Positions 16,333-55,996 of a stretch of 64,000 nt of DNA are shown one piece after another. The DNA lies in the NCBI GenBank assembly GCA_964247055.1, contig OZ176050.1, positions 3,410,001 through 3,474,000 on the forward strand, written 5' to 3'. Numbering within the stretch: the first letter of the stretch is position 1; every line of letters begins with the position of its first letter. Source of the DNA: Paragordius varius. Lineage: Eukaryota > Animalia > Nematomorpha. A program made the position numbers and the translations under genes. The notes below the pieces were generated by a model. It saw nothing but the letters and a program-made list of their open reading frames with translations. It was not told the DNA's origin and did not search any database.

Positions 16333-16372
<40 letters not shown>

Positions 16373-18415: not shown

Positions 18416-20387
18416 ATTCCCAAGATGTTTAGTATTTTGGTTTCGTATATTTTATCTTCTGAAAAAAGTAATTAATGTTTTCTAATTTCTTAAAACACAT
18501 TAGATTATTTATTACAAAGGCACCTTGAGTTTAGATTTGTATTTAAAAATATTTAAGCCTTTTTCGTTAAAAGATCAATCTTTAAATTCAATGCATATTC
18601 AAGTAAAATAGTTATGATTTAGCCATTGCTGCCTGACCGGACGGTACACCATATTTTTGGCAGCAGAGAAAAGACTAAACCAGGTGGTATATTTTTTCAT
18701 TATACTTTTAATAAAACATATTCATGCTACTTTTAAATAACATCTAGGCTCTAGGCACATCTTAGGTTTGTTAAAAATGCTTTCTGGTTTCTCTTGATCC
18801 ATAATAAGTCTGATATATATCGAGCATTTTATCAATAGCCAACAATAATTTTTTATCCATGAGATTAAACCTATTTAAACTTGCTTTTCCTCTGAACGTT
18901 TCTTATTTATCCACAAAGTCATACACCGTTTTCTAATTTTTCAATGGAGACATATCTTTATTTAAGACAAAATGAAGAGACGAGATTTTATGGTTTATAG
19001 GATTTACAAATGTTTTTTAGCCCTTGGCGTATACTCACTGACCTCTATTATTGATTATTACATTGGTTGATTGCCTTTATTTACTCCTATCATGGGAGAA
19101 AACATTTACCGTCAGACACAATAGAATTATTTGTTTGATTCCCCTATAAATTTTAGAGTTTCATAATAGAAAAACTCATTAAACAAAGGTCGTATTTAAA
19201 TTGCTACCACAAATTTTCCAAGTCTAATTTTCAATTATCCATCACATTCTCATTTCAATGAAAAATAATAAAATTCTTGACACCTTATTTCCCTCATTTC
19301 TTAATAGATCTTTTTGATGCATATAAAAAATAAAATAGCCAAAAAATTTGCATGGATCACTGGTTTAAAGATTTCTTTTACCCGAAAATTTGAGAAAGAA
19401 TTGGGCTAAATATAAATTTACACCCGAATATAGGAAAATTCTTAGGTGCATATAATCGGCAACGTATTATACAGTAAAAGTTTTACCACCAACCTAATTG
19501 GTTCAATTGTTACCGGTTAAAATTTTTTAAATACCATGCATTTCTGGCATCTAACCCTACAGAATCAAGAAAAACGGAAATAGAAATGAATAGATAGACA
19601 ACTTCTTCTGAAATATGTGACTGCTGTGAAAAATAAGTAAATGCAATAGATTTAGGTACTTATGGCAAAAATTCTAGTATATTTTGATGTCTGATATCCT
19701 CACAACATGTAAAATTTTGCATATTAGTTTCATTCCCAAATATAACATTTATATTTTAAATTCAGCCCTAAACATTTTAATTTATCTTTAAATTAGAATT
19801 TACGTTCAACATTTCAAAATCCTAAAACATGCGTAATTAATTAATATTTTATATTTTTAACATTTCGAATATACCCTTAAACTCAGATTTGCCCAAAAAA
19901 GAAATTGTTATTTTTGGAAAAGGAAATTTTGTTTGAAATTAACACATGTTTAAATTAAAAATGTTCGGGGGCGATCAATGGTGAATTCTAAGTGTCCAAA
20001 AATGAATCGAGGTGTAAACAGTATATATTTTTATATAGTAAATATATGCACTTTAAATTTAAAAGACAAAAAAGTTTTTTTAACTAATCCATAGAATAAT
20101 TATTGCCGAAAATATTCGGCTTTTTTAAGGAATTCAATTTAACGTGCATGGATTCAAAACTGATTGAATATAAAATGACAAATCTAAAAACACCCTAATT
20201 TATTTTTTAGCTATTACGGTTCTTATTAACAAAACTAATATTTATTTACTACCCGATGAATGCATGATGTTACAGATATTTATTATTTTTTATCTTATTT
20301 ATATATATACAATCATATTTTTGTACAGAAAAATATGCATAAAGGTAGGAATTATATATACACTGATAAGTAGTAGACAATAAAAAT

Positions 20388-20656
20388 TTAAGCCGCTTCC
20401 ACCTTAATTTTAATGGGCATTTCACTTCCGTCAGCATCACATTGATATAAACCATAATCAGAGGCTTGGACATTCGGTATCAAAAGTGTGCCTTGCCTAC
20501 TTTGCGAAGTACTGAGAGATCCGTCGAGTCTGACCCATTTAGCATTGCATTCCGTTTGTCCTGGGATGGGGCAATTGCATTTTAAAGTTAAGGGTTTCCC
20601 GGGTGCTATTCGCACAACCGTTGGTGGAACAGTTTGTACAAACTTTGTTTGCAATG
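20388..20656 (-). other. Ig-like domain 3 (terminal exon)
   Basis: PGKPLTLKCNC...AKWVRLDG...GTLLIPNVQASDYGLYQC shows the Ig core Cys(B), Trp(C) and D-x-G-x-Y-x-C(F) pattern. Stop follows IKIKVEAA, with no TM segment. Confidence 0.9.
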
Positions 20657-23600
20657 CTATTTGCACACATTTAAATAATATTTTTTAGGAAAAGTTGGCC
20701 ATTTTTAAAATATGACTATTCTAAATAACTTTTTAAATCTAAACTATCTTTCTTATTAACCTTATGTTTATTTTCTTGGGACATTAAAAAGATTGGACTT
20801 ATTTCATAGCGCAGATTATATCTAAATTTGGTTAGTATGTGATATATAAGTGATATTATATATGTGCATATATAATTTATTTATTCTATATGGCATTATA
20901 TACATAATCCAGGTAAGTGCATGATATTGTGCCAATATCAAAATAATTTCATGCGTGCTGCTGTGATTTACATATTAATATATATACAGTATCAAAACTA
21001 GGGTGCAAATTAGTAAAAAATATAAAAGATTTATATAAGATTGATGGCAATATCAGTTAAAATTAACCGGTTACAGGAGATACAGCTGTTACAGACGGGA
21101 CAATGGAAGATGCGACGCCTAAAAGAATAGCATAAAAATATGAATTATTATTGCAGGGAATCTATGTATTTTATCAATATTTATTTAATAATAATTCTCT
21201 CAAAATAGCCAACTCTTTGGCACGTATATGCATTTGGACTCACAAAAATCATTTGAATTGCATTAAAAGTAAAACCCTTACACAGCCTCTCTAAATTAAT
21301 TGTTTATTGTTTTAATAAATTAAAAATGATTTTTCCCTTCATGGAAAATATTTTATAATATTCATAAAATATACCCGAAGATACAGGAAAACTTCCAGTT
21401 AAAACTGTTGATGCACTCGGAGGCTCAGTAACAATCTCTGCGACTGTAACAATAGTTGTCAATTCAGGGAGAGCGGGTTGAGATACAAGGCTGGCTGTTG
21501 GAGCTTCTGAAATAACTTGACCAGCCGCAACATTTTCTATATTAAGCAAAAATAAAAGAATTGTTATTTTCAAATTTTGGTATTGAGATTATAAGAGTTG
21601 AATATATAATCGGATAAACTTGTATGTAAAATTTTAATAAATTTCTCATTACACACGCTTCTTTTTTTAATATATATTTTAACCTTAAAATGGTTAAATG
21701 CTATATATAAAAGAGCTTTGTTCAAATCAAATATCAATACGATTTTAGTATTCAATTAAAATTAATTCGTACCAACTGGGGCCACATTAATAATTGGGGA
21801 GGGTGGTTCAGTTACAACCTCGGCTACTGTGATTACAGTTGTGGCTTCTGGAATGACAGATTCGGATATTACCGGTTGAGGTTGAACTGGAGCTAAGAAT
21901 TGATATAATTTTATAACAATGCGAATTAGGGAATATAGAAATATTTACAAATTAGTGATATTGATGGATAAATATGGTTAAATTTATGATATTTACAATA
22001 CCCGATATTGGTTGAGCTATATTAGTACCTGTTTGTGAGGGTATAATGACAGGAACAGGGGCTGGAATTATAGTTTGAACTAATAATAAAAAAGATTGTA
22101 TTTATTTTCATTTTGATTAATTAACTTCAAATATCAATGATTCCGATGGTTTATCAAATTGTCATTAAATTATTTTGTTAGATATAATTTAAGAAGTGTA
22201 GTACCTGGACCGACTACAGTTGGGGTCACGATTTCTGTGGATGGTATCACGAGCTGTTCTGATATCAATGAATCAATAGGTGTTGCAGCATCTAATCAAT
22301 AAATTAATAATTGTATATTTATAATTAAAAATAGGGAAATCTGTTAAAAAATTCATCATTATAAAACAAAAATGATTCATATACTTTCTAAAGATTCTGT
22401 AACGATTTCAATGGGGGGTGTGGTGGCATAATCAATTTCAACTGGGGCGGGAACTGGTTGTTCTATAATTATATAAAAATATTATTCAAATATTTTTTTC
22501 ATTTTTGTTATTATACTATCAATGACTTAATATGAACCTGGGGCGACTATGGGCTGTGCCGTTTCTCCAACTACAATGGGTGCTGGAACTATTGCTGTAT
22601 GAAATAAAATAAAAAATATATATTGTTACAGTTTTGGAATCAAGTTTGAGTCCCGAATTATTATTAACTAAAATCTGTAATAGACTTCTTTTTAAATATT
22701 TTTGACCTTTGGTAAGCTTTTTTTAAAACAGAAATTAAGTAACCTGGCGCGACAGCTGCAGAAGGCGGTTCTGTAATAATTTCAGTTACAGTTATAACGG
22801 AAGGGGCTTGGGATACGGTTTCAGAAACAACCACCGCTATCATATAACGATAAAAAATTATATGAATTTTTAAAAATACAGCGGCCCGAAAAATTATATA
22901 ATTTATATACGTGATTGTGGTGCATCAGGGACTGAAGGCGCTGCTATGGGAATATATGATAATTTATGTAAATATTACATTAACTAGTGATCTCTTAAAA
23001 ATAATTTTTAAAATGTGATATATTTTTTCAGAGTATTTTATACCTGGTAAAGGTTCGACGGATTGGGGAACTTCTTGAACAGCTGGAGGGAGTGGAACAG
23101 CTATGGATTTTAAAATAAAAGTATATTTATTGTAAAAAAATATTTGTAAACTCCATATAGTAAGAAAAAGTTAGCAAGTTTTAACATTTTAGTTTTAAAA
23201 AAAATGTACCACCAAGGCCTGGGGCGGCAACTAGAGGGGGTTCGGTAATTATCTCAGTAACAGTTATTACCGATGGTGCTTCTGACACACTGGATTGTAA
23301 AACAACGGGGGCTATATATTTTAACACATATCCGATTACAAAAATATACTTTTTGACTAAAATATTTATAGTCAAATAACTTAGATAAAATCAATAAACA
23401 TCATTAAAATTCACAAAAAAAATTTTCCCCAATTTATCTCGAAAACCACCAGTTTTAGATATTGTTTAATTTCATGATAAGAATTTGGACTCAGAACTGG
23501 AACCGTTTTTTGGCTCCGGCCGATTCTGGTTCACATGTAAAAAACGGTTTGGGACATATGTTATTTGATAAATATTTGTTGAACAAATAGTTTTGATCTA

Positions 23601-24935
23601 TATTCCATAATTTTAAAGTTATTAATTATAGTTGGGATGGTGCGATGAATTATATATAAACAAAAAATCTCTGCAATCTGAAACCTATAAAATATAGATT
23701 TATTGTATACAAATAAAAACTATAAATAAGGGTAACATTATTAATTATAAAAAGAAAAATGAAAAAACTATTATCGAAACCTCGGTTTTAGCTCTAAAAC
23801 AGAATTGTTCAATTAGCAAACGGTAAAAAATAAGGTCATGGTACCGGTTCCATATAAACCACTTCGGTTTCAATCCTTGAAAATTAAGGATTTTTTACGA
23901 CAAACGGATTATTTTGTTAAATCAGAAAGAACCCTTTACTATATTTATTCTCGAAATATAAATAATTAAATCAATAAATACCAGATGTGACTTGTTCGAT
24001 TAAAAAATTTTAAAATATTATTAAAATTTAAATATAAGTATAGTTAATAAATTTTTTAAAAAATATGACTGTATCTAAATAATACCTATTGATTCTGGTG
24101 CTGTTGGTGTAGGTTGTCCTATTTTTCAATTTAAATAAATATTTAACAGATAAGTTTCGACAAACAACAATTTGATTGATATTCGTTTGTTAAAAATTTA
24201 AATATCAAACATAAAAAAACCATATTTTATTATAAAAAGGAACCTGGTTGTAAAGCAGCACCTGCGGCTAATACTCCTGCAGCTGGTAAAGCAGCTAAAA
24301 TTGTTAGAAATAAAATGTTATATGTCAATTATATGTAACCTCCTGTAAAAAGGTAATTCAATTAATTATTATTGCATCAAATATATTCACCATTGTAACA
24401 AAATAACCAATCAAACATACAAGTTAGATATCAGCAAATAAAAATATAAAATCAAATGTGTATAATAATATCCACAAGTTAATTTTGTATTAATCTTTCA
24501 CATATTTTGTTTTGATTATTAAATACTTTGACCGTGCATAACTTCATTTGTCAAGCTATTATTTTATCCCGTAAAAAAGAGCACAAGGTACAATCATGCT
24601 AAGGCAACTAATGAAAAATTGAATAATTAATCAATAAAAAACCAAACCTTGAGGTCCTTCTGTAGGCTGCGCAACAGATTCCTGAGGTTGTACGGCGCTA
24701 ACCGCGCTTTCAGCTAAATCAAGAAATTATACAAGTTTAAACAAGATAGATATACACTTGATATTTATTACAAATCAGGCAGATATTGAAGAAAAATATT
24801 TCATTTGGAGTCGCTTAAACACGAATTTAATAATTACCAGGGGGAATTTCTACTGGTATTGGCGCTACAACTGGTGCGGATGGAGTTTCTAAAACAAAAA
24901 GGGTTACACATATTTTTTTAATTTATCATTAATCA

Positions 24936-24967
<32 letters not shown>

Positions 24968-27900
24968 GTAAAAGTTGAAATTATACGGACAAAACGTTAA
25001 AATTAAAAGACAATCATATTTTCTTAATCTGGATTTATTTTAATTAACTCATTGTTTTGTTTTGCGACATGGGAATCAGACATGTAAATTGGTAATGCAC
25101 TCAATATTTTAAAATGTAATTATAAAGATTATGTAGTAATCAAAGTTCTAAAAGTATGGTTTATTAAAAAAAATTTGGCTTTTAATTTTTACGTTTTGTC
25201 CGTATAATTTCAATTTTTACTGCAAAATTATCATACCAGCTGGTGTACCAGCGGCCAATACACTTGTTGCAGGCAAGGCAGCTAAAATGTTAAATGGAGA
25301 AATAACTTTAATTTACAGACAAGGGTGTAAAGATATTTAATTTTAATAAAAATTATTATATATTTTAATACCAGATGCTATCGTTTCCTGTGGTTGAACA
25401 ACTTCAATTGGAGCTATAAACACATTTTTATATATAAAGCGGTTTATTATCAGATAATTTATTTTTTCAAATCGGCAATCTCATGTTTAAAAGGCGTAAA
25501 AAAATTAAAATCTACCTGAAGGACTTTCAACAGCCACGGGAGCTATGACTTGAGGGGTAGCTTCTGAAAAATATAACATTTTTAGTTAAAATGATTGAAC
25601 TTGAGAAAAAATTAAAATATTTAAAATACCTGATCCAGCTTCTCCCACCCCCAGAGCACCAGCGGCTGGCAAGGCGGCTATAAAAAATCGATAAAAAATA
25701 AATTATTTTTTTCCCAATTTCCGCCTTTTTTGTGGATGGATAATTATATTAATATTGCATATACAAATAAAATTTGAATACCAGAAGGAACAGCTTCAGT
25801 AGGTGGTTGTCCAGCAACTACGGGTGGCCCAGCTAAAATTATCGAAAAATATTTTATAACTGCCTATTGTAAAATTAACCTTAATTTTTAAATATTATTG
25901 AAATGAAATTTTTTGAAAATTAAATTAACCTTCTACAACGGTTTCAGATCCCGCTGGAACTGCAGTACCTGCTTCCCCGCTGGCTAAAACAAAATTATAG
26001 ATCAGATTAAATTAAAATCTCATAATTGTTTGCCTTTAATGTTTTTACCATATACTTATATTTTTTACCCTTTTGAAAGATGTTATTGCCTTAAGCTAGA
26101 TGTGGCTAACACACAAAAGGTAATAATTTGCTTTCTGGCATAAATTCTTTGTTAAAAAGCACATTTATTTAAATATTTTATAGGCAGCAACTATAATAGT
26201 ATAGAGAATTAGGCGCAGTTAAATTTGAATTAAATTGTTATTTCGATGTTTTTGTTTATAGGTTTTAAAAAGCTTCATTTATATATTGATATTGAATCTA
26301 ACAAAAAGATAATCTTTATAGTAAAGTATGCGTACTCTAGAAAATTCTTGCTATAAAAAACGGAGATCTATTGTAAAATCGCTGTTAGAAATATTTCTTT
26401 TATTCAACTTAAAATTTAATGTTTACAGGACTTCCTAGTTTTCTTGATACAAATTGTGCAATTTAAATAATTTTTGTGGTCATTTATTGATATAAATTTA
26501 AAATAATTAGGAAATGTGACATAACCCCAAACAACCCGAATTTTCAAATACAATGGAACCGGTACCAAACTAATTTTTTTTAATAAAGTCAAAAATACCA
26601 CTTTGTAAGTATGTGGAATCCATAACAAAAAATGTTAGAATACAGTCCCAGTTCCAATACATTGTTTTCTATCATTTGCAATTCAAGACATGAATATTTT
26701 AAATTTATTTTGCACACTTTAAGTTTGTCCTTCAACTATTTGGTTTTGTTTTTACTTTTTATCAACCAAATCTATATCATTCATCTAGTTTGTCATTTTT
26801 AACATATATTCTACATTAACATAGATTTTAAAAGATTATCAGCTTTTAATTATTCAGAAACCGTATATTTTTATTAATTTCTTAGAAAATATTTTAATTT
26901 ATAAGATTTTAACACGTAATTAAAAAATATATATATATATATATATATATATGTTTCCGGGTTATTATTTAGAATTTTTTATTATAAACATTTATATTTT
27001 TTTTGAATTGGAAAAGATTAGTTGGAAACAAAAAAGTGGTTTTTGAATAAAAAAAATTATTTTTTTAAGGAATAAATATATAATAAAAGAAAATTAGGTT
27101 AAAATATAATTAAACAAAAAAATGAATGCAAAAATTATGGTTAAATTAAAACTTAATTTTTTAAGGACACCTTGAAGTGTTGAGGGACCAACTTAAAGTG
27201 AACGACCAACTTGAAATGTTCAAGGACCAATAGAGTGTTCAGGATATGGTATATTTTAATTAGTTGAAATAACCAATTATTGCTCTCTCACTTAATAAAA
27301 TTGATAATTTGAGCAAATTTATTATAACAAACTTTATCGATTTATGTATAAAAATAAGACTAGTATTTACAGGTAGGTATTGATGAGGCGATTTTTTGTT
27401 AGTTAGTACAGATATTGTGGGTTAATACTTTACTTACAATATTATAAATTATTTCACAATTATATTTGAGATGAGTGCATAATAAATTAAAATCCCGTGA
27501 TAATTTAAGAGTATGCGTGCTTGAGATAACTAATTCTAAATGGCGTTTAACCTGCGGGTGTGGGTTGGACGACGACAGGAGTTCCTTCAACTACGCCTAA
27601 TTTAAATTAAAAATATAATAATTTCCTTTAAAGACAATTTTTTGAATATTGGATATAGGAAAAAGTCTTTTACTTAGAGAAGCACATCAGATAATTTTTA
27701 ACCATATTAACCGAAATTTTACATTATTTGTCATAATAATTAAGAAGTTACAAATATAATTAAAATTTGATTTATGCCAATTATAATTATACAAGACAAC
27801 ACGGATAGCAAATGCTAGTATTAATGTTAATTTAACAAAACACTTATTCATAAAAAACACCCGTATAAACTCGGCCATGCAGTATTTTTTTAAATTTGCG

Positions 27901-39900: not shown

Positions 39901-42900
39901 GAATTTTAATAAAATTGATTGAATAAACATTAAATTTAAAAATTAAAAGTTTAGGGAATATACCCGAATTTCATATATATTTTTTCGACTTATTTAATTA
40001 AAAGGCCCCCTAAAATCTATATAATTTGATATTTTAATGCAATCTTTTTAACGATCCCCAAGCAAAAATATTTTCTAGCATTAAGGGAAAATATTTATTT
40101 TTTAACCTGTTACGCCTGCTGGTGGAGCACTTTCCACGGTTCCGGGTATTACAGTTTCTCCTAAATTAGTATGTTTAGATAATTTTAGTATTTGAAGCAT
40201 AAAAAATTATTTATATGAAACATTTTGACAAAATTAGTTTTCGTAAAAAAACCTGTGGCTGGAAGTTCGCTCCCAGTCACAACAGCCCCAGGAATAACGG
40301 CAGCTTAAATATTTTTCGAAATTAAAAAAATAATTATTTTATAAAAGAACCTTAATACCACATGTAATGTATATATTTAATAAAAAATTGCAAAAGCTAT
40401 AGAATTTATACCTGTGGGTGGAAGTTCTGATCCTTCTACTCCTGGTGTAATGGCCGTTTCTCCCGGAGCTAATATGAAAAATTAATGAATAAGAACACGT
40501 TCAGATTATTATTTGTAAAAAGTGATAATTAAAATTGGGAAAATATAAAATACCTGTGGGAACAGGTGATGCGGTTTCTACTGCTCCAGGTATCACTACA
40601 GTCCCGGGCACTATATTAAAAAATTATATTATAAGTTTATTTTTTAAATAATTACTCCATTTCTGATTTTTATAACCCTTTTTTGTAGTGTATTCCACAT
40701 ATTTTTACATAAGCACAATCATTAATTTATTTAGATACCTTCTGCAATACCTTGTTATTAAATGGTTTAAATATAATTTAACATTTATAATTATGTTTAA
40801 TCTTAATAAGTTTGTAATCCTCGAAAAATAAAACCAACCTGGTGTTGGAGTCTCGGCACCTTCAACGATCCCTGGGACAACAACTGTTCCAGCATCTATA
40901 CATAAAATTAATTATATTTAATATCTGATGATAATTTATAAAAATTAAAATTTTTCCAATTATTTAAAAAAAAATATGAAGTAATTTTTTGATTATTATA
41001 AATATAAATAATTTATAACCTGGTGCCGGTGTTATTGGTGCAGCTTCTACCGTTCCGGGGATAACTTAATATATTTTTTTACAAGATTAAAATGTTTTTC
41101 ACAAAAAATCGGCAAATTAAGAATGTTAAAAACATTTTACCTGTGGGTGTTTCTGCACCTTCCACCACACCGGGGACGACTTCAGCTCCTCCTATGTTAA
41201 TTGTAAAAATTTTAATACTGAATTTACAGGAATAAATATTTTTATAAAAATAGAACCTGGAATGGGCTGTCCTTCCACAGTCCCAGGAATAACAGTGGGT
41301 GGTGCTTAAAATGTAATAAGATTTTATTAATTTTTTGACCATAATTTAAACGGAGAAATCAGGGCTTCGAGCCTAACTAGAACCACATAGATCCGGAACT
41401 CGGTTCCTGAGATTTCAGCAGAACCAGTCCCGATGTTGAAACAGTTACGATTTTACTTACTCAGGAACTACCTCGGTTTCATGAACCAGATCGGTTCCGT
41501 TTCCCCTCCAAAATAAGTAGTTCCCATATGGTTTTATGTTAAAAAATAAAATTATTGTTCAAATTAATATTTTATATTTGTTTAAATAACATTTTCTCTA
41601 GTTTCTCATCAAAATAAAATGAATCATTATTTTGTTGTTTGAATATTGTTTTTTAAAAAAGTTGATTCTTCTTACATCCAATTGAAATAAAATTATTATC
41701 AAATATTTTAATATCTTACCTTTAACGCTTGAAGAACCACATATATAATTTTTTAACGTAGATTTTTTTTAATCAACAGATTGATAACATTTAAGTTATT
41801 AATTATGAATCTAGTAAAAAACCGTAAACTATAGCGTTCATAATCAATACCATAACGAAAAAATTGCACATTATATATATGAGTGACTAAAATAGCGGCA
41901 CATGGGCCGCATGAGACAGTTAAGATATTAAAAATATAAAAATTTTAACATCTAAGGTTACATTAGCGGTTATTTTATGGCTCACTATATAAAAAAAACT
42001 TATCCACGCTAGATCTGGGTAGTATTGCGACAATCGATATGCTTAATACAATTATTTTTTAAAGTTAAAAAAATTTTTTTACATAGATGCAACAAATACA
42101 AATACACTGCTACCCTTGTACTTATACGCTTGGCAATTAAATTTTTAATATGTTTTCATTTACGATTTATTCTGGTTTTTATTGCAATAAAAATGTTATG
42201 TGGAAATCTTTTGAGGAAAAGTCAGGAACCAAAATGGAATCGGTTCCAAATTTAAAGAACCGCTTCCAGAACCCTTAAAATTTTAAGGAACCAACCCGGT
42301 TCCGACTCCGCTTGCTCAGCAGAAACCACACCGGCTCCACACCAAAATTTTAGAAATCCCCCCGGTTCTTTTTAAGTTTCTAGAAACCAACCCGGTTTTG
42401 TTTTCAACAGTTCAGGAACTTCCGGTTCCGGTTCCAATTGAACCGGTGGGAAGCTTTAAAAATCCCTTAATAATATAATATTGTTTGCAATTTTGGCCAA
42501 TTTTTACTCTCCAAAATACGAAAACCTAACCTTCATTAGCAAGCAAATGCCTTTTACATCAAAATTAGAAAAAATATTACTTTGGTACAAATTAAAAATT
42601 ATCTTACCTGCTGTAACTGGTGTTTCGGCTCCTATAACCACAGGTAATGGAACAATAGCGCCTCCTAGTTTATATTTCAAAACAAAATTATTATTTGATC
42701 TCAAGTAAATGTAAAATAATTAATTTTCGTGCATTTTAATAAACAACAGTTTAATAAGATAAGGGGTAAGCATTGCATCAAGTTCAATATTTATGTGAGA
42801 ATTTAATTTGTAACTATTTATTTTAAAAAATTAAATTTAAGGTAATTTTTTAAGAATATTGCATAAAATATGTAGCCAACCTAGTAGCATATTTAACAAA

Positions 42901-45900
42901 AAAACTGTCTTTTATTTGTAAAAACACCCCAAACTTAGTAACTTCAATTTACTGATAATTTAAGGTTTTTTACCAGGTGCAGATGGGACTTCCGTTCCAG
43001 GAACCGGGGTAGCTTCAGCACCTTAATATGAAAAATAGATAGTTGCAAAGCAAATTAGCAAATTAACGTTTTAAATTGTGAGTTTAGGCATTATAATTTT
43101 TGTTCCTATAATTTTGACAAAAAATATATAATTAAAGGTTAAGATTTATTTGTCAAATAATAATATTACCCGGCGACGGTGTCACCTCAGCACCTTCTAC
43201 CGTTCCTGGAACAACGGTTTCACCGGAAGCTGAATATAATAAAATGGGTTTTATTGTAAACAATCATCATTGAAAATACCAAATAATCAGTAAAAATTTG
43301 CTTTGTAATATTGCTTTCTGGTCAAATTTATTCATTATACTAAAAAATTATAGCGTGTATTTATTTCATATTATAAGTTGAATATTTACATAAAATCGGT
43401 AAATTTATAAAAAATTATGTATTCTCCAAACTTATGTATTACCTGGCACTCCAGCGTCAGGGGCGATACCACCAGCACTGATACTAGGAATGGGTGCTAT
43501 TAAAAACGAATGCAATAAAATTTGAGCTTTGATTGTGGTATTTTATAAAAATACATTTTTATATTTACATTAATATCTTTTATTAATACAAGATCATCCG
43601 ATCTTGAAACTTTTTCTTTTTCCTCAAAGTTTCATAGATCGCTATGTATGTAATGAATATATAAATACTTGCACCATCAGGCGTTTTCTCCAACACGACA
43701 GTTATGGTACGACCCGTGTTTTGGGAAACGCATCGATACAGTCCATAATCCTGAGCAGTTATATTCTTGATGACTAGCCGTCCCTCAATAACTACGGCGT
43801 TTGGGGTCATTTGAATGTTTCTTGGACGCGTCCAAGTCACATCACAAACACTGTTTGGTGGTAACACGACACAACTGCATGTAAATTCGACTTCCGATCC
43901 GGGTGGGGCAACAGCCATAGGTGGTTGAGCGACCATTGATCCATCTATATTATAATTGCAGTGTCAGAAAGATAATTAAAGTATGTGCTTTCACCAAGAG
44001 TGAATACTATTTAGATATATGCAATAAGCCAAAAAAGCTTGGATGTCTTAAAGTGGAACTAACTTATTGCGCACATTTACTAATATGAAGTTGGCAATAA
44101 AATTAGTCATTAAAGAATTAAATACCTTACGCCTGTTTTACTACATGTTCAACAACCCATTCAAAGCATAAATTTTGTAAGGACAAAATTTATTAAATTA
44201 TTCAAATTGAGTCAAAATTAATAGATCAATACTAGACCTGGTGAAGGCAAAACTGCACCTCCAATTACTGTTGGAGCACCTGGTTCAGACGGTTGGCCTA
44301 AAAATGGCAAAATATTTATTAAACAATTCATTAAAAAAATATCTTCCATAATTGTGTGTTCAATAGATAAATAACTCACCTTCAGTCAGGACCCCTGGAG
44401 CTGCGGTTACTGTTTCTCCTCCTATTGGAGCTTCTGTTATAGCTGTGTCTCCTACAACCGGTCCGGTAACGACGGTTTCTTGACCTTTATATATAATTTA
44501 ATATTGATGCCATTGAGATAATGATAAAGTAATTGCCTCAATGATATACATTATGATTTTATTTATCTTTCAGAAATTAATATATTGGTTGCCAATCTTT
44601 ATCTGCTTCGAACATGTGAATTTTAGCTATTACTTTGATTGTAAAAATAGTTTATATAATATATATATATATATTAAGAAAGATCTAGATTAACATAAAG
44701 GCTTGATTTAGGATAAGTTTCAAGATACAAATGAATAAGGTTTAAAATTAATATGTAAAAATAAATATAATATCAATATCCCATGATAAATGTAATGGAC
44801 CCTAACGGTTAAATGTAAATAAGAAATACCGCACATTTGCATTTTTTTTCAATTTATAGACTGTATTAGTTTCATAATTTTCCTACCTATAGGAGTTTCT
44901 GTGGCACCAGGTACGATTTCTCCACCAGGACTAGGAGTAACTTCTATTGTGGCTCCCGTGACTACTGTCTCTGGTTCTATAAATATCATTAAAAATGTCA
45001 TGAAATTGACATTATAATTTTTTATCATAAAAAAATTTATGAATAAAAGGCGTTTTTTGCTATGTCATAGTTTGCCGGTCACTAATAATGTCACTTGCAC
45101 ACCCGTATATTTAAATATCAATTTGTGTGTTAACGATCGGCACTCAAAATTATTTCGATAAGAGGGATGCAACAAGAACTATAATATAATCATCGAAAAA
45201 TCATTCTTTTTATAATTATTAAAAACGAAACAATTCGATACATATTCAAAAATGACAGCCCTTTTGTTAATACGGAAATAAATTAAACCTGTTGGTACGC
45301 CAGTGGCTCCTGGAACTACAGAACCATCTGGACCTGTAACTACTCCACCAATTACACTTGGGCCTATTATTATCACATATATATAAAATCGAAATTTGAA
45401 TTCTAATTCTTTAAAAAAGATATTTTCTAATATTAATTTACATACTTGTGGGCGTTCCAACAGTTTCAGGCACTGATCCATCGGGTGTTACAACCTCTCC
45501 GCCTATTACAGTAGGGCTTGGTGCTAAATCAAAATTTTATAAGTTTCCGAAAAATTATCATTCAATACCCTAACTATTTTCATAAATAATTATTAAGTAC
45601 ATTTGGATGAACTTACCTATAGGCGTTACTATTTCTCCTGAGATGGAGCCATCGGGGTTGGTTACAATGCCAGTAATAACAGTCGAAGTTACTAAATTTT
45701 CATAGAAAACAAGCATTTTTTATTTTAAATAAAAACATTTTTGATAGCGTCTGAAAATTTGCGAGTCAAATCAACTGCATGGTTTTTATTAAGGCCACAA
45801 TATATTTTATTAGTATTAACAATCATTTTTTTAGCGTAGGTTTGTATCCAAACCGCTTTTAAATACAAAAATATAAAAATGCATTTAAAATATCTCGTTT

Positions 45901-48900
45901 TTAAATTCTTAACAGTGCATAATTCAAAATAAATTTTTTGAATGTAAATTGTTTAAATAAATATATTAATCTTATTCGCAGCCAATTTTTTCTTTAGATT
46001 TATTTAGATAAATACAACTGGCAAATAAATTGTATATTATGGTTAAAAAATAAAAATAATTATTGTTAAAACGAAGCATTTAAATTACATTTTAGCAGCT
46101 GATTTTTGATATTTATGAATTTAAATCAGGTGTATGTTTCGATCGGGTTTTGAAGCTATCCTAGTTTTAGATTTCCGAAGTTATAAAATATAAAAAATAA
46201 AAGCTTTCTGTCTAATACGGGATCATAATGTTTAATAATAAAGTGTTAACCAGAATAACTTTTGCAGATGGTCAAAGTTTAGGTTACAAAACTCCCCCAA
46301 TCGCCACAAAAAAAATAAGATGGAAGGATGAAAAATTTTAAACTTAAACAACATCCAAATTATGATGTAAAATGTAAAAATAATTTATATAACACAAATA
46401 GAGTCATATTATAAAATCCGTATACCTTCAATGGGAACTGGTGTTTCGGCAATTATTGTAGATCCAGTCACAACGATCGCCCCTATAAACCGAAAGAAAA
46501 TATTTTAACAATGTATTCTATTGTTAAATTTGAAATCTTTATATAAATTGGGACTTATCGGAAGATGTGATTTAATTAATTATTTAATAAAACTACTCAC
46601 TCCGAAATTTTCATTCAATTTATATAATTTAACTTAAGACAAGATAAATCCTAAACTATAATGTTGGTTAAGATTTAATATTTTATATTTGGTTATAAGT
46701 GTAAGAATGTTTATAAATGTCGATATATAAATAAGGCATGTATGAATTTAAGCCAACATACGAGGAGCACTCATGAACTTATAAATGATATCCACAATCG
46801 TGACAAAACTGTTTGTTATTCGAATGAATAAACCAAAGTGTCGTGATTGAAAAACGAAAACTAATTAAATCACCTCTAGATGTGAAAACCAAAATTTTAA
46901 CACATATATACCAGAATTCTGTAATATTCATATGAAAATAATATTGATATTTTTAGTACCGGGAATTTCTGTAGCGCCAGGGGTTCCTCCAGGAGCAACT
47001 ATGAAAAGAATATTTATTATTATATATTTCAAATCAACCAAGTAGGTTTTTTAAAAAAATAACATTTTAAGTTATCATACTTTCAGGTGGGCTTGTTGCG
47101 ACTTCTACTGCGCCAGTTACTAATTGTAACAAAGTAGATTTAAAGATAAACAGTTAAAACATTATTAATATAATATAAATTTTAAAATAGGTTCGAAATC
47201 TTGGTTAAGCATTCTATGGAAATCTAATAAAATTATTTTATAGTATTTATGATTCAACTAATATTCATTAATTTATAAACCTGAAGTTGTAACAATATTA
47301 ATTGGTCGTTGAGTTGTCCGACCTCCGGGTCGTATAATAGGTAAAACATAGTTTTGTCGCCATTGTTGTCCTTTGACTGGAGAGACATATCTTTGCCCAA
47401 AGCCTGAATAAAAACGTTATAAAATATTAATATAAAATCATAAAAACAATATAATTTAGATTTTTTATTATAACTTTATCATACCTCCAGCCGGTCCTTC
47501 AGGACTTCCGTACCCTAATGCGTATAATATATATATATATATATATATATTAGATATGATTATAACAATCCGAATATATTTTGAACTATTTAAAAATGTC
47601 TTTTTAGCTTAACATATTAACAAAAATATTTTGCTTAATATATCTACTAGCCATAATTATAAGTTTTAAATTTATAAAAATACCCAACTTTACCAAAATC
47701 AACATGAAAGTTTTTTTCAATCTAATTTACAATTCCTTTTCTATCATATAATAAATATGACTATGATTAAATTAAATAAATATTTGAATTATATATGTAT
47801 TATACCTGCGCCAAGAGGATTTCCATCAGCATCGTAAATGCCCGCATTTCGAAGATTAATGGTTAATGGCATTAGTTTAGGGTTTCCTGGGGAAAAGCAA
47901 TCATACAAGCCAAAATCTGAAGCTTGCAAATTCGGAATTCTCAGTAGACCCCCGGATACTTGAGCTTGTGGCGGGAGGCCACCAACCCTTTTACGCCATG
48001 CGACTCGATATCCTGCGAAAAAAACGAAAAAAATAAGTAAAAGCTTTTTCGGTTAATATATTATTTAAGTGAAATTAGTTAAAGGCATTTCTATATAACA
48101 CTCAATTATTTATATATTTTAACTTTCCAAGTTTAAACCACATGATATTGGTGTTTTTTTATTATATTTAGCATAATTAGATTGATATGTTAAATATCCA
48201 TCTTTACTTCAAATGAATATAAAAATCTAATAAAATAACAAATTTTGAGTAAAAAGATATTATTTTAAAAAATGATCATTGGATTTCCAAAAAATCTCAA
48301 TCTTAAATTGAACAATACATTTCATTATTAACACAGCTCAGCAAATTTTTAAGTATAATAAAAATTTTTATTCTCATAACAACCTGATCTTTGCGGCGAG
48401 CACTTAAATTCAGCCGTTTCTCCCACTTGTCTTAACATAGTTCCTGACGGATTTACATCAAGCGGAAGAGGGGCATAACCCCCGTTGGGTGGAAATGGGT
48501 CTGGACCCTGAATTGTGGTGTCATATAATATTCCTTGTTGACTATCATAAGGTTCCACAGTTCCTAGCGCATCTTGTGACAAATGTTTGTGTGTATATAA
48601 AATACAGAAATTATTAGATGGTAAAGAGCAATAGTATTAGTTATAATGTTTTTAATTGGTACATATAATTTGCAGTGTTCACATTTATATTGTTTAGTTA
48701 TGGAAAAAAGTGGTTTTATAACACTGTATTACAAATTGAACAATAGTGTGAATGATCCAGCATAAATGTGCATACTGTTATGTGGAAGAATATATTTTTG
48801 GGTTTTCTCATTTCATTTAGGTTAGTTAGAAAAACAAAATACATATTTTGGCTAACAAACAATACCGTATTAATGCATCAAAAACCATATTAAGGTTATG

Positions 48901-50241
48901 TATGACGATTCCGTAAAAAATTATATTCGGTTTTAATATTTAAAAAATACAAATAACTTACAGATTATATATTTTACAGCTAAACTCATTTAAAAAAATA
49001 TTTTATACATTTGTATAAACCGATCTTATTTATGGAGTATATACTGATCGATTCATTCAAAATACCAAGCTCTACAGGGAAAATAAGATATTTATGGCAA
49101 GTTAGTATTTATTCTAAAAATATAATTTGATGTCATAATGTAGTAACTTTGCTTAATCACAATTTTATGCGCTTGGGTTTAGAGCTTAGAAAAGAATATA
49201 AAAACAGAAATATTCAAATCATCTATTAACATTTTTGGGCTTTCTTATTTAAATATATCTAATATATTGTATGATTTAACTTTTGGCGATGAAATTTTAT
49301 TAATATAGTGAATTAGTATTTCGATTTAACTTAATTATGAAATTTTTAATTTCCTGATAAGCTTTAGAACTAAAAGCACCATAAAAATTTAATACAATTT
49401 TTATTAAAATGCAAATAGAGCTTTGCATGCACTGTGACATATATTTATAAAAATTTTATATTTAAATATAACAATTACCATAACAAGCTATGGGCTATTT
49501 TTGTATCTAGTTATGATAAAAAATATTCCTGGTAAAAGATTGTTTAATTCCAATATTTGGGCTAAATGGAGAACCGGCATCGTTCTTAATCTTTATAAAA
49601 AAACTAATTATTTTTTAGGTGCAAAATAATTTTATCATATACTTATCTAAAAATTATAAAATTAAACATATATTTGTAAAACGTTACGTAGACTGTTAAA
49701 CGTTGAGTTTAACCGAATGTATAAGATTTTATCGGTCTGACCGGGTACTATGAATCGATTAGGTCAAAAACCCAAACCTACACATACTAGATTAAGGGAT
49801 CTCATTATTTGGCATATGAAAACACATGAATCAACTCAAAATTTGGATTAATTATTTTTACCGAGGAAAAATTAATGTGAATTCTAATTGAACCAAATTA
49901 TGACTTTACTAACATTTTTCAAATCGGCTTGCCTATTATCCATTTTGTTTCTTCTCGATGTAATTAACAAATTGGGCTTAATAGGTATTTATAATGATTA
50001 CAATTGAAACAACAAATTTGTAGGAAAAACGAGGAGGAGTCATAAAATTATCCCTGAGAGATTCAGAGGGTCTTTTTATACGATTTAATTTATTACAATT
50101 AAATTTAAATTGCATATTTATTAAAGTTAAATTTAATATTTTTCTAATTTTGCATTTATATTATATATGAATTTAGGACATACCAATTTGACTGGTTAGC
50201 AGTAGTATCACAGATATAAAAAATGGGATAAAATGGATCAT
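20388..50241 (-). CDS. Secreted ~2,010-aa protein: signal peptide - Ig - spacer - Ig - ~1,420-aa Pro/Ala/Val/Gly/Thr/Glu low-complexity spacer - Ig; 94 exons, all introns phase 1 (micro-exon gene)
   Basis: Exons in transcript order: 50241-50184, 48572-48384, 48012-47806, 47514-47485, 47403-47281, 47119-47081, 46998-46960, 46482-46426, 45691-45617, 45523-45446, 45363-45289, 44976-44887, 44484-44380, 44297-44238, 43944-43669, 43496-43443, 43229-43170, 43021-42974, 42664-42608, 41304-41257, 41191-41141, 41064-41020, 40895-40839, 40610-40554, 40468-40412, 40303-40253, 40160-40107, 39886-39824, 39727-39671, 39436-39392, 39328-39269, 39210-39151, 39030-38965, 38797-38738, 38589-38536, 38396-38346, 38154-38095, 37898-37839, 37658-37599, 37470-37417, 37279-37232, 37038-36979, 36792-36736, 36636-36580, 36497-36441, 36356-36291, 35556-35497, 35036-34983, 34834-34790, 34608-34507, 34437-34411, 34337-34308, 34216-34184, 34077-34030, 33798-33757, 33628-33578, 33501-33451, 33166-33128, 32116-32081, 31966-31925, 31546-31508, 31424-31392, 31314-31282, 31101-31060, 29816-29784, 29512-29471, 29327-29298, 29184-29143, 29039-29001, 28870-28829, 28374-28327, 27596-27552, 25983-25930, 25832-25782, 25677-25630, 25563-25516, 25413-25372, 25281-25237, 24888-24838, 24713-24648, 24294-24244, 24118-24086, 23311-23210, 23100-23044, 22943-22911, 22836-22744, 22594-22538, 22462-22385, 22291-22205, 22079-22002, 21892-21773, 21536-21375, 21118-21068, 20656-20388. 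Each is a GC-richer island bounded by AG/GT in ~80% AT introns. The sum is 6039 nt with no internal stop. The first exon, MIHFIPFFISVILLLTSQI-G|gtatgt, is the best upstream candidate and is less certain. Manual count; a few exons could be missed or have alternative donors. Confidence 0.88.
23450..23885. mobile_element. Fragment of the GAACCGGTTC-motif element family in an intron
   Basis: gaactggaaccgttttttggctccggccgattctggttc at one end and gtaccggttccatataaaccacttcggtttt at the other, with similarity to 41440-41600. Confidence 0.4.
29885..31010. mobile_element. Intronic MITE/foldback-like element with ~150-bp terminal inverted repeats and internal inverted repeats
   Basis: 29885-30030 (cagtgtgaaaaaaa...atgagataccttataaccagcgaattcctttgcc...aaatcgaaattggacaaa) is the reverse complement of 30880-31010. 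Internal IR: tttcatgagtgtataa / ttatacactcataaa. Confidence 0.6.
32360..33090. mobile_element. Second, left-truncated copy of the 29885-31010 element
   Basis: Collinear with 30290-31010 at an offset of about 2.07 kb. Ends ttttttggacacagtg-ta, a Tc1/mariner-like terminus. Confidence 0.55.
36745..38995 (-). repeat. Tandem duplication of a ~1.12-kb block containing five exons and their introns
   Basis: Exon pairs 36979/38095, 37232/38346, 37417/38536, 37599/38738 and 37839/38965 (offsets 1114-1139), with clearly alignable introns. Confidence 0.9.
41365..42455. mobile_element. Intronic copy of the GAACCGGTTC-motif element
   Basis: Both ends are dense in gaaccggttcc variants. The interior (cttacctttaacgcttgaagaaccac; tatagcg; ttagcggtt) matches 17600-18130 and 3560-3770/6230-6380. 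Confidence 0.6.
43669..43944 (-). other. Ig-like domain 2 (single 276-nt exon)
   Basis: PPGSEVEFTCSC...DVTWTRP...GRLVIKNITAQDYGLYRC. Confidence 0.9.
47806..48572 (-). other. Ig-like domain 1 (split over two exons)
   Basis: RQVGETAEFKCSPQRS|GYRVAWRKRVGGLPPQAQVSGGLLRIPNLQASDFGLYDC. The LP..A.V.GG.L.I pattern is reminiscent of perlecan-type Ig repeats (resemblance only). Confidence 0.9.
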
Positions 50242-55947: not shown

Positions 55948-55996
55948 TTAAATATAGCAATATTTACATAAAAAACTATTTAACGATCGGTACGAT

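What the first reader, a model, noticed from the sequence alone, without database searches (positions are those of the whole stretch)
20388..50241. 94-exon all-phase-1 micro-exon gene: a secreted Ig-flanked, spliceable spring or spacer protein
Seen: a 30-kb region that the ORF track shows as nearly empty contains 92 internal exons. All are multiples of 3 and phase 1-1, and 75 are 27-66 nt long. They join into one ~2,010-aa ORF: signal peptide, Ig1, Ig2, a 78-exon low-complexity spacer and Ig3, with no TM anchor. Established: frame-preserving small exons encoding low-complexity elastic segments occur in the titin PEVK region (between Ig arrays, length tuned by splicing) and in tropoelastin. Schistosoma micro-exon genes use symmetric micro-exons to diversify secreted proteins. 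Inference: this is an extracellular, length-tunable elastic linker or spacer (cuticle, ECM, adhesive or host-interface), which I do not recognise as any named family.
Basis: partly seen in the sequence, partly recalled or inferred. Interest (0 to 1): 0.92.

Follow-up and report, generated by a model that had tools for sequence, protein, structure and literature searches.

The report
Secreted Ig protein from 94 micro-exons
A probable horsehair-worm gene is cut into 94 small pieces that all break the reading frame the same way; it encodes a likely secreted protein with three antibody-like binding modules joined by very long, floppy, acidic linkers, a layout like vertebrate elastin or the titin spring, though whether it is elastic or variably spliced could not be tested.

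Summary
An independent exon search on the minus strand (20388-50241) rebuilt a 94-exon, 2,004-aa open frame. All 92 internal exons are multiples of 3 in phase 1-1, and 76 are 27-66 nt long.

Evidence that it codes for protein:
- A frame-blind search gave 85 of 92 strong exons divisible by 3.
- The other two frames carry 113 and 85 stops.
- GC at codon positions 1/2/3 is 0.72/0.59/0.27.
- 13 of 16 listed exonic variants in a DNA run are synonymous, and exon indels are 3 nt.
- A duplicated five-exon unit has pN/pS 0.28.

The protein has a signal-like leader, three Ig domains closest to perlecan/hemicentin and contactin types, and no other hydrophobic segment. The 1,415-aa Ig2-Ig3 linker has no K, R, H, C, M or W, and its net charge is -133.

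No protein with the same architecture turned up among the best hits of the one Ig-domain search that was possible. Spacer exons match no Pfam family.

Three RNA runs gave no contigs on the 3' 6 kb laid, so the splice chain, exon skipping and elasticity remain untested.

The scan noted this stretch before (s1-253121) and similar phase-1 micro-exon genes elsewhere in this genome.

Verdict: a real, lineage-specific extracellular linker protein, and a new variant of the elastin/PEVK exon design.

The parts
50184..50241 (-). Exon 1: ATG plus a 19-residue hydrophobic leader (putative signal peptide). It ends in phase 1 at the donor G|GTATGT.
   Evidence: Sequence read. It is the only 19-residue window in the protein with mean Kyte-Doolittle hydropathy of 1.6 or more (1.99). 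The upstream tract is A-rich and a poor acceptor, and an in-frame TAA lies 36 nt upstream.
47806..48572 (-). Exons 2-3 (48384-48572 and 47806-48012): a roughly 45-aa N-terminal segment and Ig1, split by a phase-1 intron.
   Evidence: Local phmmer matches Ig1 residues 34-105 to Ig repeats of a perlecan-like protein at 32 bits. Pfam Ig_3 matches exon 3 alone only weakly. Ig1 aligns to Ig2 and Ig3 through the shared L.I.N..A.D.GLY.C motif.
47281..47514 (-). Exons 4-5: a short Gly/Tyr piece and a 41-aa basic segment, the only K/R-rich part outside the Ig domains.
   Evidence: Both exons were recovered by the frame-aware and the frame-blind searches. No Pfam match.
44238..47119 (-). Zone A, exons 6-14: 206 aa of T/V/G/P-rich units of about 25-35 aa between Ig1 and Ig2. 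No K or R.
43669..43944 (-). Exon 15: Ig2, a complete domain in one phase 1-1 exon, with four Cys and one N-glycosylation sequon (NIT).
   Evidence: Pfam Ig_3 2e-9 and I-set 1.7e-5. PDB phmmer best match contactin-2 at 1e-15; perlecan Ig3 (1gl4_B) at 2e-5. Sequon found.
34983..43496 (-). Zone B, exons 16-48: 616 aa, about one (V/I)(V/I)PG(V/T)VEG-type motif per ~19-aa exon.
   Evidence: 30 of 33 exons contain PG; there are 39 hPG motifs and 20 VEG. P 0.16, G 0.19, no K/R/C/Y.
36736..39030 (-). Recent tandem duplication of a five-exon, ~1.15-kb unit (exons 33-37 and exons 38-42, running on into exon 43).
   Evidence: blastn: 1,244 nt at 83% including gaps. MAFFT: 88% identity in exons and in introns alike. 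pN/pS 0.28. Exon similarity peaks at lag 5, z = 6.2.
27552..34834 (-). Zone C, exons 49-72: 336 aa, mostly 9-16-aa A/P/V/E-rich exons such as APAPVVEAAAP.
24086..25983 (-). Zone D, exons 73-82: a three-exon super-repeat (AALPAAG... / E.P..VVAP... / ...VQPQE...).
   Evidence: Exon list. Lag-3 periodicity across zones D-E, z = 5.9.
21068..23311 (-). Zone E, exons 83-93: 300 aa of larger exons that repeat the motif SEAPSVITVTEIITEPP four times.
   Evidence: No Pfam match for exons 83, 86, 89, 91 and 92.
20388..20656 (-). Exon 94: Ig3 (four Cys), followed by the stop TAA (reverse complement of 20388-20390) a few residues after the last strand. No hydrophobic tail.
   Evidence: Pfam Ig_3 2.9e-10 and I-set 3e-6. 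PDB best match contactin-2 at 4.5e-17; titin only 1e-6. Best hits in the 1.84-billion-protein library are perlecan-like and hemicentin proteins.

Best explanation
This is an intact, selected protein-coding gene of an AT-rich animal genome. Earlier scan notes call it a horsehair worm; I did not test that. It encodes a ~2,000-aa secreted extracellular-matrix-type protein.

Shown: three Ig modules of the perlecan/hemicentin/contactin kind sit at the N-terminus (Ig1), about 290 aa further on (Ig2) and at the extreme C-terminus (Ig3). Between them lie two low-complexity linkers rich in Pro, Val, Ala, Gly, Thr and Glu. The linkers have no basic, Cys or Trp residues, one Tyr and five Phe. The net charge is about -155 over 1,620 aa. 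The linkers are encoded by about 87 phase 1-1 micro-exons (median internal exon 54 nt), each roughly one peptide unit ending in Pro and starting with a split G-N-N codon. The array grew by tandem duplication of three- and five-exon blocks.

Inferred: the linkers are intrinsically disordered and act as a long flexible, extensible tether or spacer. My own estimate, not computed in a call, is a contour length near 0.5 um for the Ig2-Ig3 linker. The attachment points would be the Ig modules rather than covalent cross-links. Because every internal exon is symmetric, any subset could be skipped without breaking the frame, so length could be set by splicing. This was not observed.
For: Gene reality:
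- 94-exon open frame.
- The frame-blind search reproduces 88 of 92 internal exons, and 85 of its 92 strong exons are divisible by 3.
- GC1/GC2/GC3 = 0.72/0.59/0.27 against intron GC 0.215.
- In DNA run X1, 13 of 16 listed exonic differences are synonymous and 14 of 16 fall at codon position 3. The two listed exonic indels are 3 nt, while 9 of 10 listed intronic indels are not multiples of 3.
- pN/pS is 0.28 between the duplicated units.

Extracellular placement:
- The leader is the only TM-like segment.
- The Ig domains have canonical Cys pairs, and Ig2 and Ig3 have an extra Cys pair.
- Ig matches are to contactin, sidekick, DCC, Robo, perlecan-like proteins and hemicentin, well above titin.

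Disordered linker: composition and alphabet, no Pfam domain.

Growth by block duplication.

Gene limits: transposon-rich sequence lies below 20 kb, there are no exon-like islands between 50.2 and 56 kb, and a plus-strand ORF with a helicase-like DEAD-box motif starts near 56.2 kb.
Against: - No RNA support. RNA runs X6-X8 gave zero contigs on 20150-26100. The tool warns that this is not proof of absence.
- Any exon can be dropped without breaking the frame, so the frame cannot prove that each one is used.
- Signal-peptide prediction is by eye and hydropathy only. The n-region has no basic residue.
- 2P+G is 0.46 overall and 0.51 in zone B. That is below the roughly 0.6 line that I recall for classical elastomers. 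It is closer to the coexistence zone where titin PEVK lies (PMC5424786).
- No binding partner, tissue or life stage is known.
Confidence: 0.55

Rival explanations
1. It is a surface-coat, mucin-like or host-interface protein. In this reading the acidic, Pro/Thr/Ser-containing linkers are O-glycosylated and hold Ig modules away from the parasite surface, or form a protease-resistant, non-adhesive layer while the worm grows inside its insect host.
For: The protein has a secretion-type leader. The linkers have no K or R (no trypsin sites) and almost no aromatic residues. T+S reaches 0.21-0.23 in zones A and E. The organism is probably a parasite (earlier scan notes).
Against: T+S is only 0.16 across the spacer, well below typical mucin PTS domains. 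Hydrophobic V, I and A dominate. There is no membrane anchor or GPI-type tail. No glycosylation predictor or expression data were available.
Confidence: 0.2
2. It is a bulk structural material (cuticle fibre matrix, egg-string jelly or adhesive). In this reading it self-assembles by hydrophobic hPG-type repeats as tropoelastin does, rather than acting as a single-chain tether.
For: Zone B carries hPGh-type motifs, about one per exon. The all-phase-1:1 exon design is identical to tropoelastin (PMC12554196). Non-polar residues are abundant.
Against: There is no Lys, Cys or Tyr for covalent cross-linking. A net charge of -133 should oppose coacervation at neutral pH. The Ig modules at the ends suggest specific binding.
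Confidence: 0.15
3. It is an intracellular muscle spring, a titin-, projectin- or kettin-like PEVK segment between Ig domains, and the 'signal peptide' is a mis-called first exon.
For: The layout is Ig - P/E/V-rich micro-exon array - Ig, as in titin. Human titin PEVK has 113 annotated exons and also shows block duplications (PMC6469411).
Against: - The hydrophobic leader is followed by phase-compatible splicing.
- Each Ig domain has a disulfide-type Cys pair.
- Titin Ig is a much weaker match than contactin or perlecan-type Ig.
- The spacer has no Lys, and no PPAK or other Pfam match appears in spacer exons.
- There are only three Ig domains and no FN3 or kinase. The gene is bounded by transposon-rich DNA on one side and a divergently oriented plus-strand gene on the other.
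Confidence: 0.05
4. It is not a functional gene: a decaying exon array or a chance pattern in repeat-derived DNA.
For: There is no RNA evidence. This genome is reported to have introns stuffed with exon-edge repeats (earlier notes).
Against: There are zero stops in 2,004 codons against 85-113 in the other frames. Allelic variants show a synonymous excess and indels are in-frame. pN/pS is 0.28. GC3 sits at the genome background while GC1 and GC2 are high. TRF finds no simple tandem array.
Confidence: 0.03

Closest known systems
Tropoelastin (vertebrate ELN)
   Same: Both are secreted. Every splice site is phase 1:1, so exons are cassette-like (PMC12554196). Exons are short and the introns make up most of the gene. 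The repeat style is non-polar hPGh: hPGhGG in elastin, (V/I)PG(V/T)VEG here. The repeats diverge by insertions and deletions.
   Different: Here there are no Lys-Ala or Lys-Pro cross-linking domains: the spacer has zero Lys. It is strongly acidic with regular Glu. Gly content is far lower. It is flanked by Ig domains. It lacks the elastin C-terminal Cys/RKRK domain. There is no sequence homology. Elastin is reported as absent from invertebrates (PMC12554196), so any likeness is convergent.
Titin PEVK spring region (and invertebrate PEVK/PEVT segments of Sallimus, projectin and TTN-1; the invertebrate examples are from my own knowledge)
   Same: A disordered P/E/V-rich entropic-spring-like segment between Ig domains, encoded by about 100 short frame-preserving exons. 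It expanded by block duplications. Standard gene finders handle it poorly (PMC6469411). Ig domains rather than cross-links serve as anchors.
   Different: Titin is intracellular with no leader, Lys-rich, and carries PPAK and poly-E motifs. Here there is a leader, no Lys, no Pfam PPAK-type match in the ten spacer exons scanned, extracellular-type Ig domains with disulfide cysteines, and only three Ig domains.
Schistosoma micro-exon genes (MEGs)
   Same: Secreted products of a parasite. Most of the coding sequence lies in short symmetric exons (3-81 bp) separated by longer introns (bioRxiv 10.1101/2023.06.21.545858, listed).
   Different: From my own knowledge, MEG proteins are small and have no Ig domains, and their exon skipping yields variant peptides. 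Here the product is ~2,000 aa, repetitive and domain-flanked. No homology was tested or expected.
Perlecan (UNC-52) and hemicentin
   Same: The Ig domains score best against their Ig repeats. The five top-ranked hits were all named perlecan-like, basement membrane proteoglycan or hemicentin. Class 1-1 Ig exons are typical of such modular matrix genes (own knowledge).
   Different: No LDLa, laminin-type, EGF, LamG, VWA or G2F modules were seen. Nothing outside the three Ig domains resembles them. Identity is only about 30-36% per domain.

Membership tests
Immunoglobulin superfamily (Ig_3 / I-set type domains) | Pfam Ig-domain match above the gathering score, with a B-F strand Cys pair and the D.G.Y.C motif | tested here: met
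   Ig2 and Ig3 score 38-41 bits on Ig_3 (cut-off 30) and 25-28 bits on I-set (cut-off 23.7). Ig1 is confirmed only by local phmmer at 32 bits. The Cys pair and the DxGLYxC motif are present in all three.
Tropoelastin | All exons phase 1:1 | tested here: met
   92 of 92 internal exons. The family feature is taken from PMC12554196.
Tropoelastin | Alternating hydrophobic domains and Lys-containing (KA/KP) cross-linking domains | tested here: not met
   Zero Lys in 1,415 aa of spacer and in zone A.
Tropoelastin | Sequence homology, vertebrate distribution and synteny with LIMK1 | not testable with these tools
   Spacer exons match no Pfam family. No tropoelastin sequence was compared directly. PMC12554196 states that elastin is not recognisable outside jawed vertebrates.
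Titin PEVK | P, E, V and K dominate; PPAK (~28-aa) repeats and poly-E segments | tested here: not met
   K = 0. No Pfam hit, PPAK-type or any other, for ten spacer exons even at E up to 10.
Titin PEVK | Part of an intracellular sarcomeric giant protein (Ig/FN3 arrays, kinase, no signal peptide) | tested here: not met
   A hydrophobic leader is present. There are only three Ig domains. The gene is bounded at both ends within the window.
Schistosoma MEG superfamily | Small secreted proteins with most of the CDS in symmetric micro-exons of 3-81 bp | tested here: inconclusive
   The symmetric micro-exon and leader features are met. Protein size and repeat/domain content are unlike MEGs. Homology could not be tested.
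Perlecan / hemicentin | Defining non-Ig modules (LDLa, laminin B/EGF and LamG; or VWA, G2F and EGF) | tested here: not met
   Pfam on the long exons finds only Ig. The rest of the CDS is low-complexity.
Mucins (PTS-domain proteins) | Pro/Thr/Ser tandem repeats with very high Thr+Ser content | tested here: not met
   T+S is 0.16 in the spacer and at most 0.23 in zone A. V, I and A predominate.

The most novel reading that the evidence does not exclude
This could be an invertebrate, convergent counterpart of elastin or titin: an extracellular single-chain molecular spring. It would have hPG-type hydrophobic micro-exon cassettes, all in phase 1:1. It would be anchored non-covalently by matrix-type Ig modules instead of Lys cross-links, with resting length and stiffness set by exon skipping. 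It may be one member of a wider set of phase-1 micro-exon secreted-protein genes that the scan has noted at other loci of this genome.
Probability: 0.25. Interest if true: 0.8.

Novelty: new variant of a known kind. Interest (0 to 1): 0.56.

Why it matters
Elastin has no recognised relative or analogue outside jawed vertebrates (PMC12554196). The best-studied splice-tuned protein spring, titin PEVK, is intracellular.

A secreted protein would be a clean case of convergent gene architecture for disordered or elastic proteins if it combines three things: elastin's all-phase-1:1 micro-exon design, hPG-type repeats, and titin's 'Ig anchors plus un-cross-linked spring' logic.

It would also offer a natural sequence with no Lys or Arg for biomaterials work. 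Finally, it shows concretely that standard ORF- or homology-based annotation would miss a 2,000-aa gene in this poorly studied phylum.

Tried and rejected
- RNA support. Two run searches found only DNA-like holders (X1-X5), whose share of words was the same in introns and in an exon. RNA runs X6-X10 had a share of 0.00. Laying X6-X8 on the 3' 6 kb gave zero contigs.
- Orthologues, full-library search. An Ig3 search of 1.84 billion representatives gave only generic multi-Ig proteins at 27-50% identity. None of the 150 best has a comparable low-complexity region.
- Orthologues, word-indexed search. The search with the Ig2 exon found no candidate.
- The spliced 2,004-aa protein could not be submitted to any database tool, because it has no contiguous reference and I did not type it.
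- ESM Atlas look-alikes of a spacer exon were uninformative low-complexity clusters.
- Pfam on ten spacer exons found nothing. Rfam on the window found nothing. TRF found no meaningful tandem array.
- My first exon search used the wrong phase offset and gave nonsense peptides. It was corrected.
- Five search-predicted 'exons' were discarded as non-coding or transposon-like: 49688-49747, 42409-42453, 42296-42334, 28006-28041, and 41352-41505 in the frame-blind run.
- Literature searches on hairworm cuticle proteins gave nothing usable.
- A look-up of earlier scan findings by sequence was blank.

Full report
**Where and on which strand**

The window is AT-rich (GC 0.21-0.35 in 2-kb steps). Reading 20-24 kb showed short GC-rich islands bounded on the plus strand by AC...CT, which is GT...AG on the minus strand. 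A scan for GC islands listed about 150 of them between 19.5 and 51.5 kb. Most had '...ag|' before them and 'CCAG|gt' at their ends on the minus strand.

**Exon model**

My first exon search used the wrong codon offset and is void. With the correct phase-1 offset (two bases complete a codon, one base starts the next), the search returned 97 candidate exons. I removed four that are AT-rich or transposon-like and that carry no repeat motif. I then added the ATG exon (50184-50241, read) and extended the last exon to its stop. The result is 94 exons, 6,015 nt and 2,004 aa with one terminal stop.

Exon coordinates, numbered 5' to 3' on the minus strand:
- 1:50184-50241; 2:48384-48572; 3:47806-48012; 4:47485-47514; 5:47281-47403; 6:47081-47119; 7:46960-46998; 8:46426-46482; 9:45617-45691; 10:45446-45523
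- 11:45289-45363; 12:44887-44976; 13:44380-44484; 14:44238-44297; 15:43669-43944; 16:43443-43496; 17:43170-43229; 18:42974-43021; 19:42608-42664; 20:41257-41304
- 21:41141-41191; 22:41020-41064; 23:40839-40895; 24:40554-40610; 25:40412-40468; 26:40253-40303; 27:40107-40160; 28:39824-39886; 29:39671-39727; 30:39392-39436
- 31:39269-39328; 32:39151-39210; 33:38965-39030; 34:38738-38797; 35:38536-38589; 36:38346-38396; 37:38095-38154; 38:37839-37898; 39:37599-37658; 40:37417-37470
- 41:37232-37279; 42:36979-37038; 43:36736-36792; 44:36580-36636; 45:36441-36497; 46:36291-36356; 47:35497-35556; 48:34983-35036; 49:34790-34834; 50:34507-34608
- 51:34411-34437; 52:34308-34337; 53:34184-34216; 54:34030-34077; 55:33757-33798; 56:33578-33628; 57:33451-33501; 58:33128-33166; 59:32081-32116; 60:31925-31966
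- 61:31508-31546; 62:31392-31424; 63:31282-31314; 64:31060-31101; 65:29784-29816; 66:29471-29512; 67:29298-29327; 68:29143-29184; 69:29001-29033; 70:28829-28870
- 71:28327-28374; 72:27552-27596; 73:25930-25983; 74:25782-25832; 75:25630-25677; 76:25516-25563; 77:25372-25413; 78:25237-25281; 79:24838-24888; 80:24648-24713
- 81:24244-24294; 82:24086-24118; 83:23210-23311; 84:23044-23100; 85:22911-22943; 86:22744-22836; 87:22538-22594; 88:22385-22462; 89:22205-22291; 90:22002-22061
- 91:21773-21892; 92:21375-21536; 93:21068-21118; 94:20388-20656

The median internal exon is 54 nt. The median intron is 143 nt, with a range of 58-1,611 nt. Coding sequence makes up 20% of the 29.9-kb span.

**Is it more than chance?**

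- A search blind to reading frame picked the same boundaries for 88 of the 92 internal exons. The other four differ by a donor 4-5 nt away. Of its 92 strong exons, 85 are divisible by 3, with P about 1e-32.
- The joined CDS has no internal stop in frame, against 113 and 85 in the other frames.
- The phase-1 chain on the minus strand scores 1,268. The other phases score 719-771, the plus strand 269-333, and the flanks almost nothing.
- 87 of 93 exons end in G, so the split codon is GNN. Acceptors are mostly TTAG or ATAG and donors mostly GTAT or GTAA.

**Is it under selection as protein?**

- GC at codon positions 1/2/3 is 0.72/0.59/0.27. Position 3 sits near the window's background GC, and intron GC is 0.215.
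- DNA run X1 differs from the window at many sites. Of the 40 best-supported listed substitutions in 20150-26100, 16 fall in my exons. Thirteen of these are synonymous and 14 lie at codon position 3 (P about 3e-5 and 1e-5). The two listed indels inside exons are both 3 nt, while 9 of the 10 listed in introns are 1, 2 or 7 nt. One caveat: only 40 of 102 substitutions and 12 of 29 indels were displayed.
- A five-exon block is tandemly duplicated (exons 33-37 and 38-42). Exon and intron identity are both 0.88, exon indels are in-frame, and pS is 0.216 against pN 0.060, giving pN/pS 0.28.

These three lines do not depend on the ORF criterion used to build the model.

**RNA**

Two run searches found DNA-like holders X1-X5. 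Their word share was the same in an intron-rich stretch and in the Ig2 exon. RNA runs X6-X10 under the same species label had a share of 0.00. Laying X6, X7 and X8 on 20150-26100 at 90% likeness gave no contig at all. So the splice chain and any exon skipping are untested. The tool itself warns that this absence proves nothing.

**The protein**

| Part | Exons | Content |
|---|---|---|
| Leader | 1 | MIHFIPFFISVILLLTSQI; the only 19-residue window with hydropathy of 1.6 or more |
| N-terminal segment and Ig1 | 2-3 | About 45 aa, then Ig1 |
| Gly/Tyr piece and basic segment | 4-5 | The basic segment is 41 aa |
| Zone A | 6-14 | 206 aa, T/V/G/P-rich |
| Ig2 | 15 | One exon |
| Zone B | 16-48 | 616 aa; 30 of 33 exons carry PG, 39 hPG motifs, 20 VEG; typical unit GGAEVVPGVVEGAETPT |
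| Zone C | 49-72 | 336 aa; very short A/P/V/E exons |
| Zone D | 73-82 | Three-exon super-repeat |
| Zone E | 83-93 | The SEAPSVITVTEIITEPP motif four times |
| Ig3 | 94 | Stop a few residues after the last strand |

The 1,415-aa Ig2-Ig3 spacer uses only 14 amino acids. It has no K, R, H, C, M or W, one Y and five F. Its net charge is -133. Zone A adds another -22. There is one N-glycosylation sequon (in Ig2), no RGD, and no C-terminal hydrophobic tail. Exon similarity peaks at lag 5 in zone B (z = 6.2) and at lag 3 in zones D-E (z = 5.9), which indicates growth by multi-exon block duplication.

**The Ig domains**

Pfam places Ig2 and Ig3 in Ig_3/I-set above the curated cut-offs. Exon 3 of Ig1 alone is sub-threshold, but Ig1 as a whole hits perlecan-like Ig repeats at 32 bits in a local phmmer run.

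In PDB searches the best matches are contactin-2, contactin-5, sidekick-1, DCC, Robo and DSCAM. Perlecan Ig3 (1gl4_B) also matches, while titin is far weaker.

In the 1.84-billion-protein library, Ig3 finds 901 proteins at E up to 0.001. The five top-ranked were checked by name. They are perlecan-like proteins of a nemertean, 'Hemicentin-1' and 'Basement membrane proteoglycan' of ascarid nematodes, and hemicentin-2-like of a skate. Identity is mostly about 30-36%, and the high totals are sums over many Ig repeats. Summed scoring favours proteins with many Ig repeats, so this ranking is only a weak pointer to matrix-type Ig.

All three domains share L.I.N..A.D.GLY.C. Ig2 and Ig3 share a four-Cys pattern. 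Together these features point to the oxidising, extracellular compartment.

**Orthology and family**

None of the 150 best hits has a 200-aa window with more than 0.66 P+V+A+G+T+E, against 0.81 across this spacer. None has a similar layout. A word-indexed search with the Ig2 exon found nothing. Ten spacer exons have no Pfam match at E up to 10. An Atlas look-up of one spacer exon returned only unnamed low-complexity clusters.

I could not search with the spliced product, so 'no orthologue' means only 'none visible through single exons'.

**Gene limits**

Below 20.4 kb lie reverse-transcriptase-like ORFs and duplicated ORF pairs, which is transposon-rich DNA. Between 50.2 and 56 kb neither strand shows exon-like islands. 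The ATG exon has a poor acceptor context and an upstream in-frame stop. I therefore take the gene to be complete within 20388-50241, apart from possible 5'-UTR exons.

**Mechanism**

Shown: an intact, selected gene; a leader; three extracellular-type Ig modules; long low-complexity linkers that are acidic, free of basic residues and rich in Pro, Val, Ala and Gly; symmetric micro-exons; and block duplication.

Inferred: the linkers are disordered chains. With no Lys, Cys or Tyr they cannot be cross-linked in the manner of elastin, resilin or cuticular collagen. Any mechanical role would therefore be that of a single-chain entropic tether or spacer held at its ends, and at one internal point, by Ig-mediated binding. 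That is titin's logic transferred to the matrix. My own estimate for the long linker is a contour length near 0.5 um.

P and G content (0.17 and 0.12 overall; 0.16 and 0.19 in zone B) would probably place it nearer the 'coexistence' zone of the Pro/Gly plot, where titin PEVK lies, than the classical elastomer field. The plot is described in PMC5424786. The numerical line 2P+G of about 0.6 is from my memory of Rauscher et al. 2006.

The absence of K, R and aromatic residues would also make the linker resistant to trypsin- and chymotrypsin-like proteases. That fits a parasite-surface reading equally well.

**Comparison with known systems**

- Tropoelastin: all splice sites are phase 1:1, the repeat style is hPGhGG, and no invertebrate relative is known (PMC12554196). 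Exon design and motif style are shared. Cross-linking domains, Gly richness, charge and termini differ.
- Titin PEVK: human titin has 113 annotated PEVK exons, gene finders miss many of them, and block duplications or triplications occur (PMC6469411). The shared logic is Ig - spring - Ig. Cell compartment, Lys content and motifs differ.
- Schistosoma MEGs: symmetric 3-81-bp exons and secreted products (bioRxiv 10.1101/2023.06.21.545858). The products are small and of a different kind.
- Perlecan and hemicentin: the Ig type is similar and nothing else is.

**Context from the scan (unchecked leads)**

Earlier notes identify the genome as probably a horsehair worm with ultra-short introns (s1-261268, s1-266886). 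This same stretch was noted as an elastin-like motif array (s1-253121). Other loci with symmetric phase-1 micro-exon genes were reported at s1-266888, s1-248866 and s1-257785. So the design appears to recur in this genome.

**Verdict**

It is a new variant of a known kind, the elastin/PEVK-type micro-exon cassette gene, in a lineage-specific extracellular Ig protein. Interest is moderate to high (0.56).

Noticed in passing
window 2095-17153: The region downstream of the gene is transposon-rich. Reverse-transcriptase-like ORFs lie at 4083-4902 (+), 7735-8429 (-) and 13637-13867 (-). Near-duplicate ORF pairs lie at 2095-2398 / 12975-13206 and at 2937-3278 / 16887-17153, which suggests a large dispersed or segmental repeat.
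   Followed up: no
window 30226-31016 and 32292-33092: An ~0.8-kb element is present in direct orientation in two different introns of the gene (introns 64 and 58). Identity is 68% over 867 nt. It is probably an old transposon family.
   Followed up: no
window 24926-25323: In DNA run X1 the summed word depth jumps from about 600 to 1.5e5-8.7e5 inside the intron between exons 78 and 79, running on into exon 78. This is either a very high-copy repeat or a low-complexity AT tract. Many loose ends and false joints cluster there.
   Followed up: no
window 41352-41505, 42261-42453 and 23476-23554: GC-rich, non-coding segments rich in GGAACCGG/GGTTCC-type words sit inside introns 19 and 82. They mimic exons in GC content but are closed in all frames. 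They are possibly a MITE-like element; only weak inverted repeats were found.
   Followed up: partly
window 20150-26100: DNA run X1 shows dense differences from the assembly. 102 substitutions and 29 indels were reported in 6 kb, including six substitutions within the 78-nt exon 88. This implies high heterozygosity, a different individual, or collapsed paralogous repeats.
   Followed up: partly
window 50241-56560: The gene is arranged head-to-head with a plus-strand gene that starts near 56.2 kb; one of its ORFs carries a helicase-like DEAD-box motif. About 6 kb with no exon-like islands lies between them.
   Followed up: no
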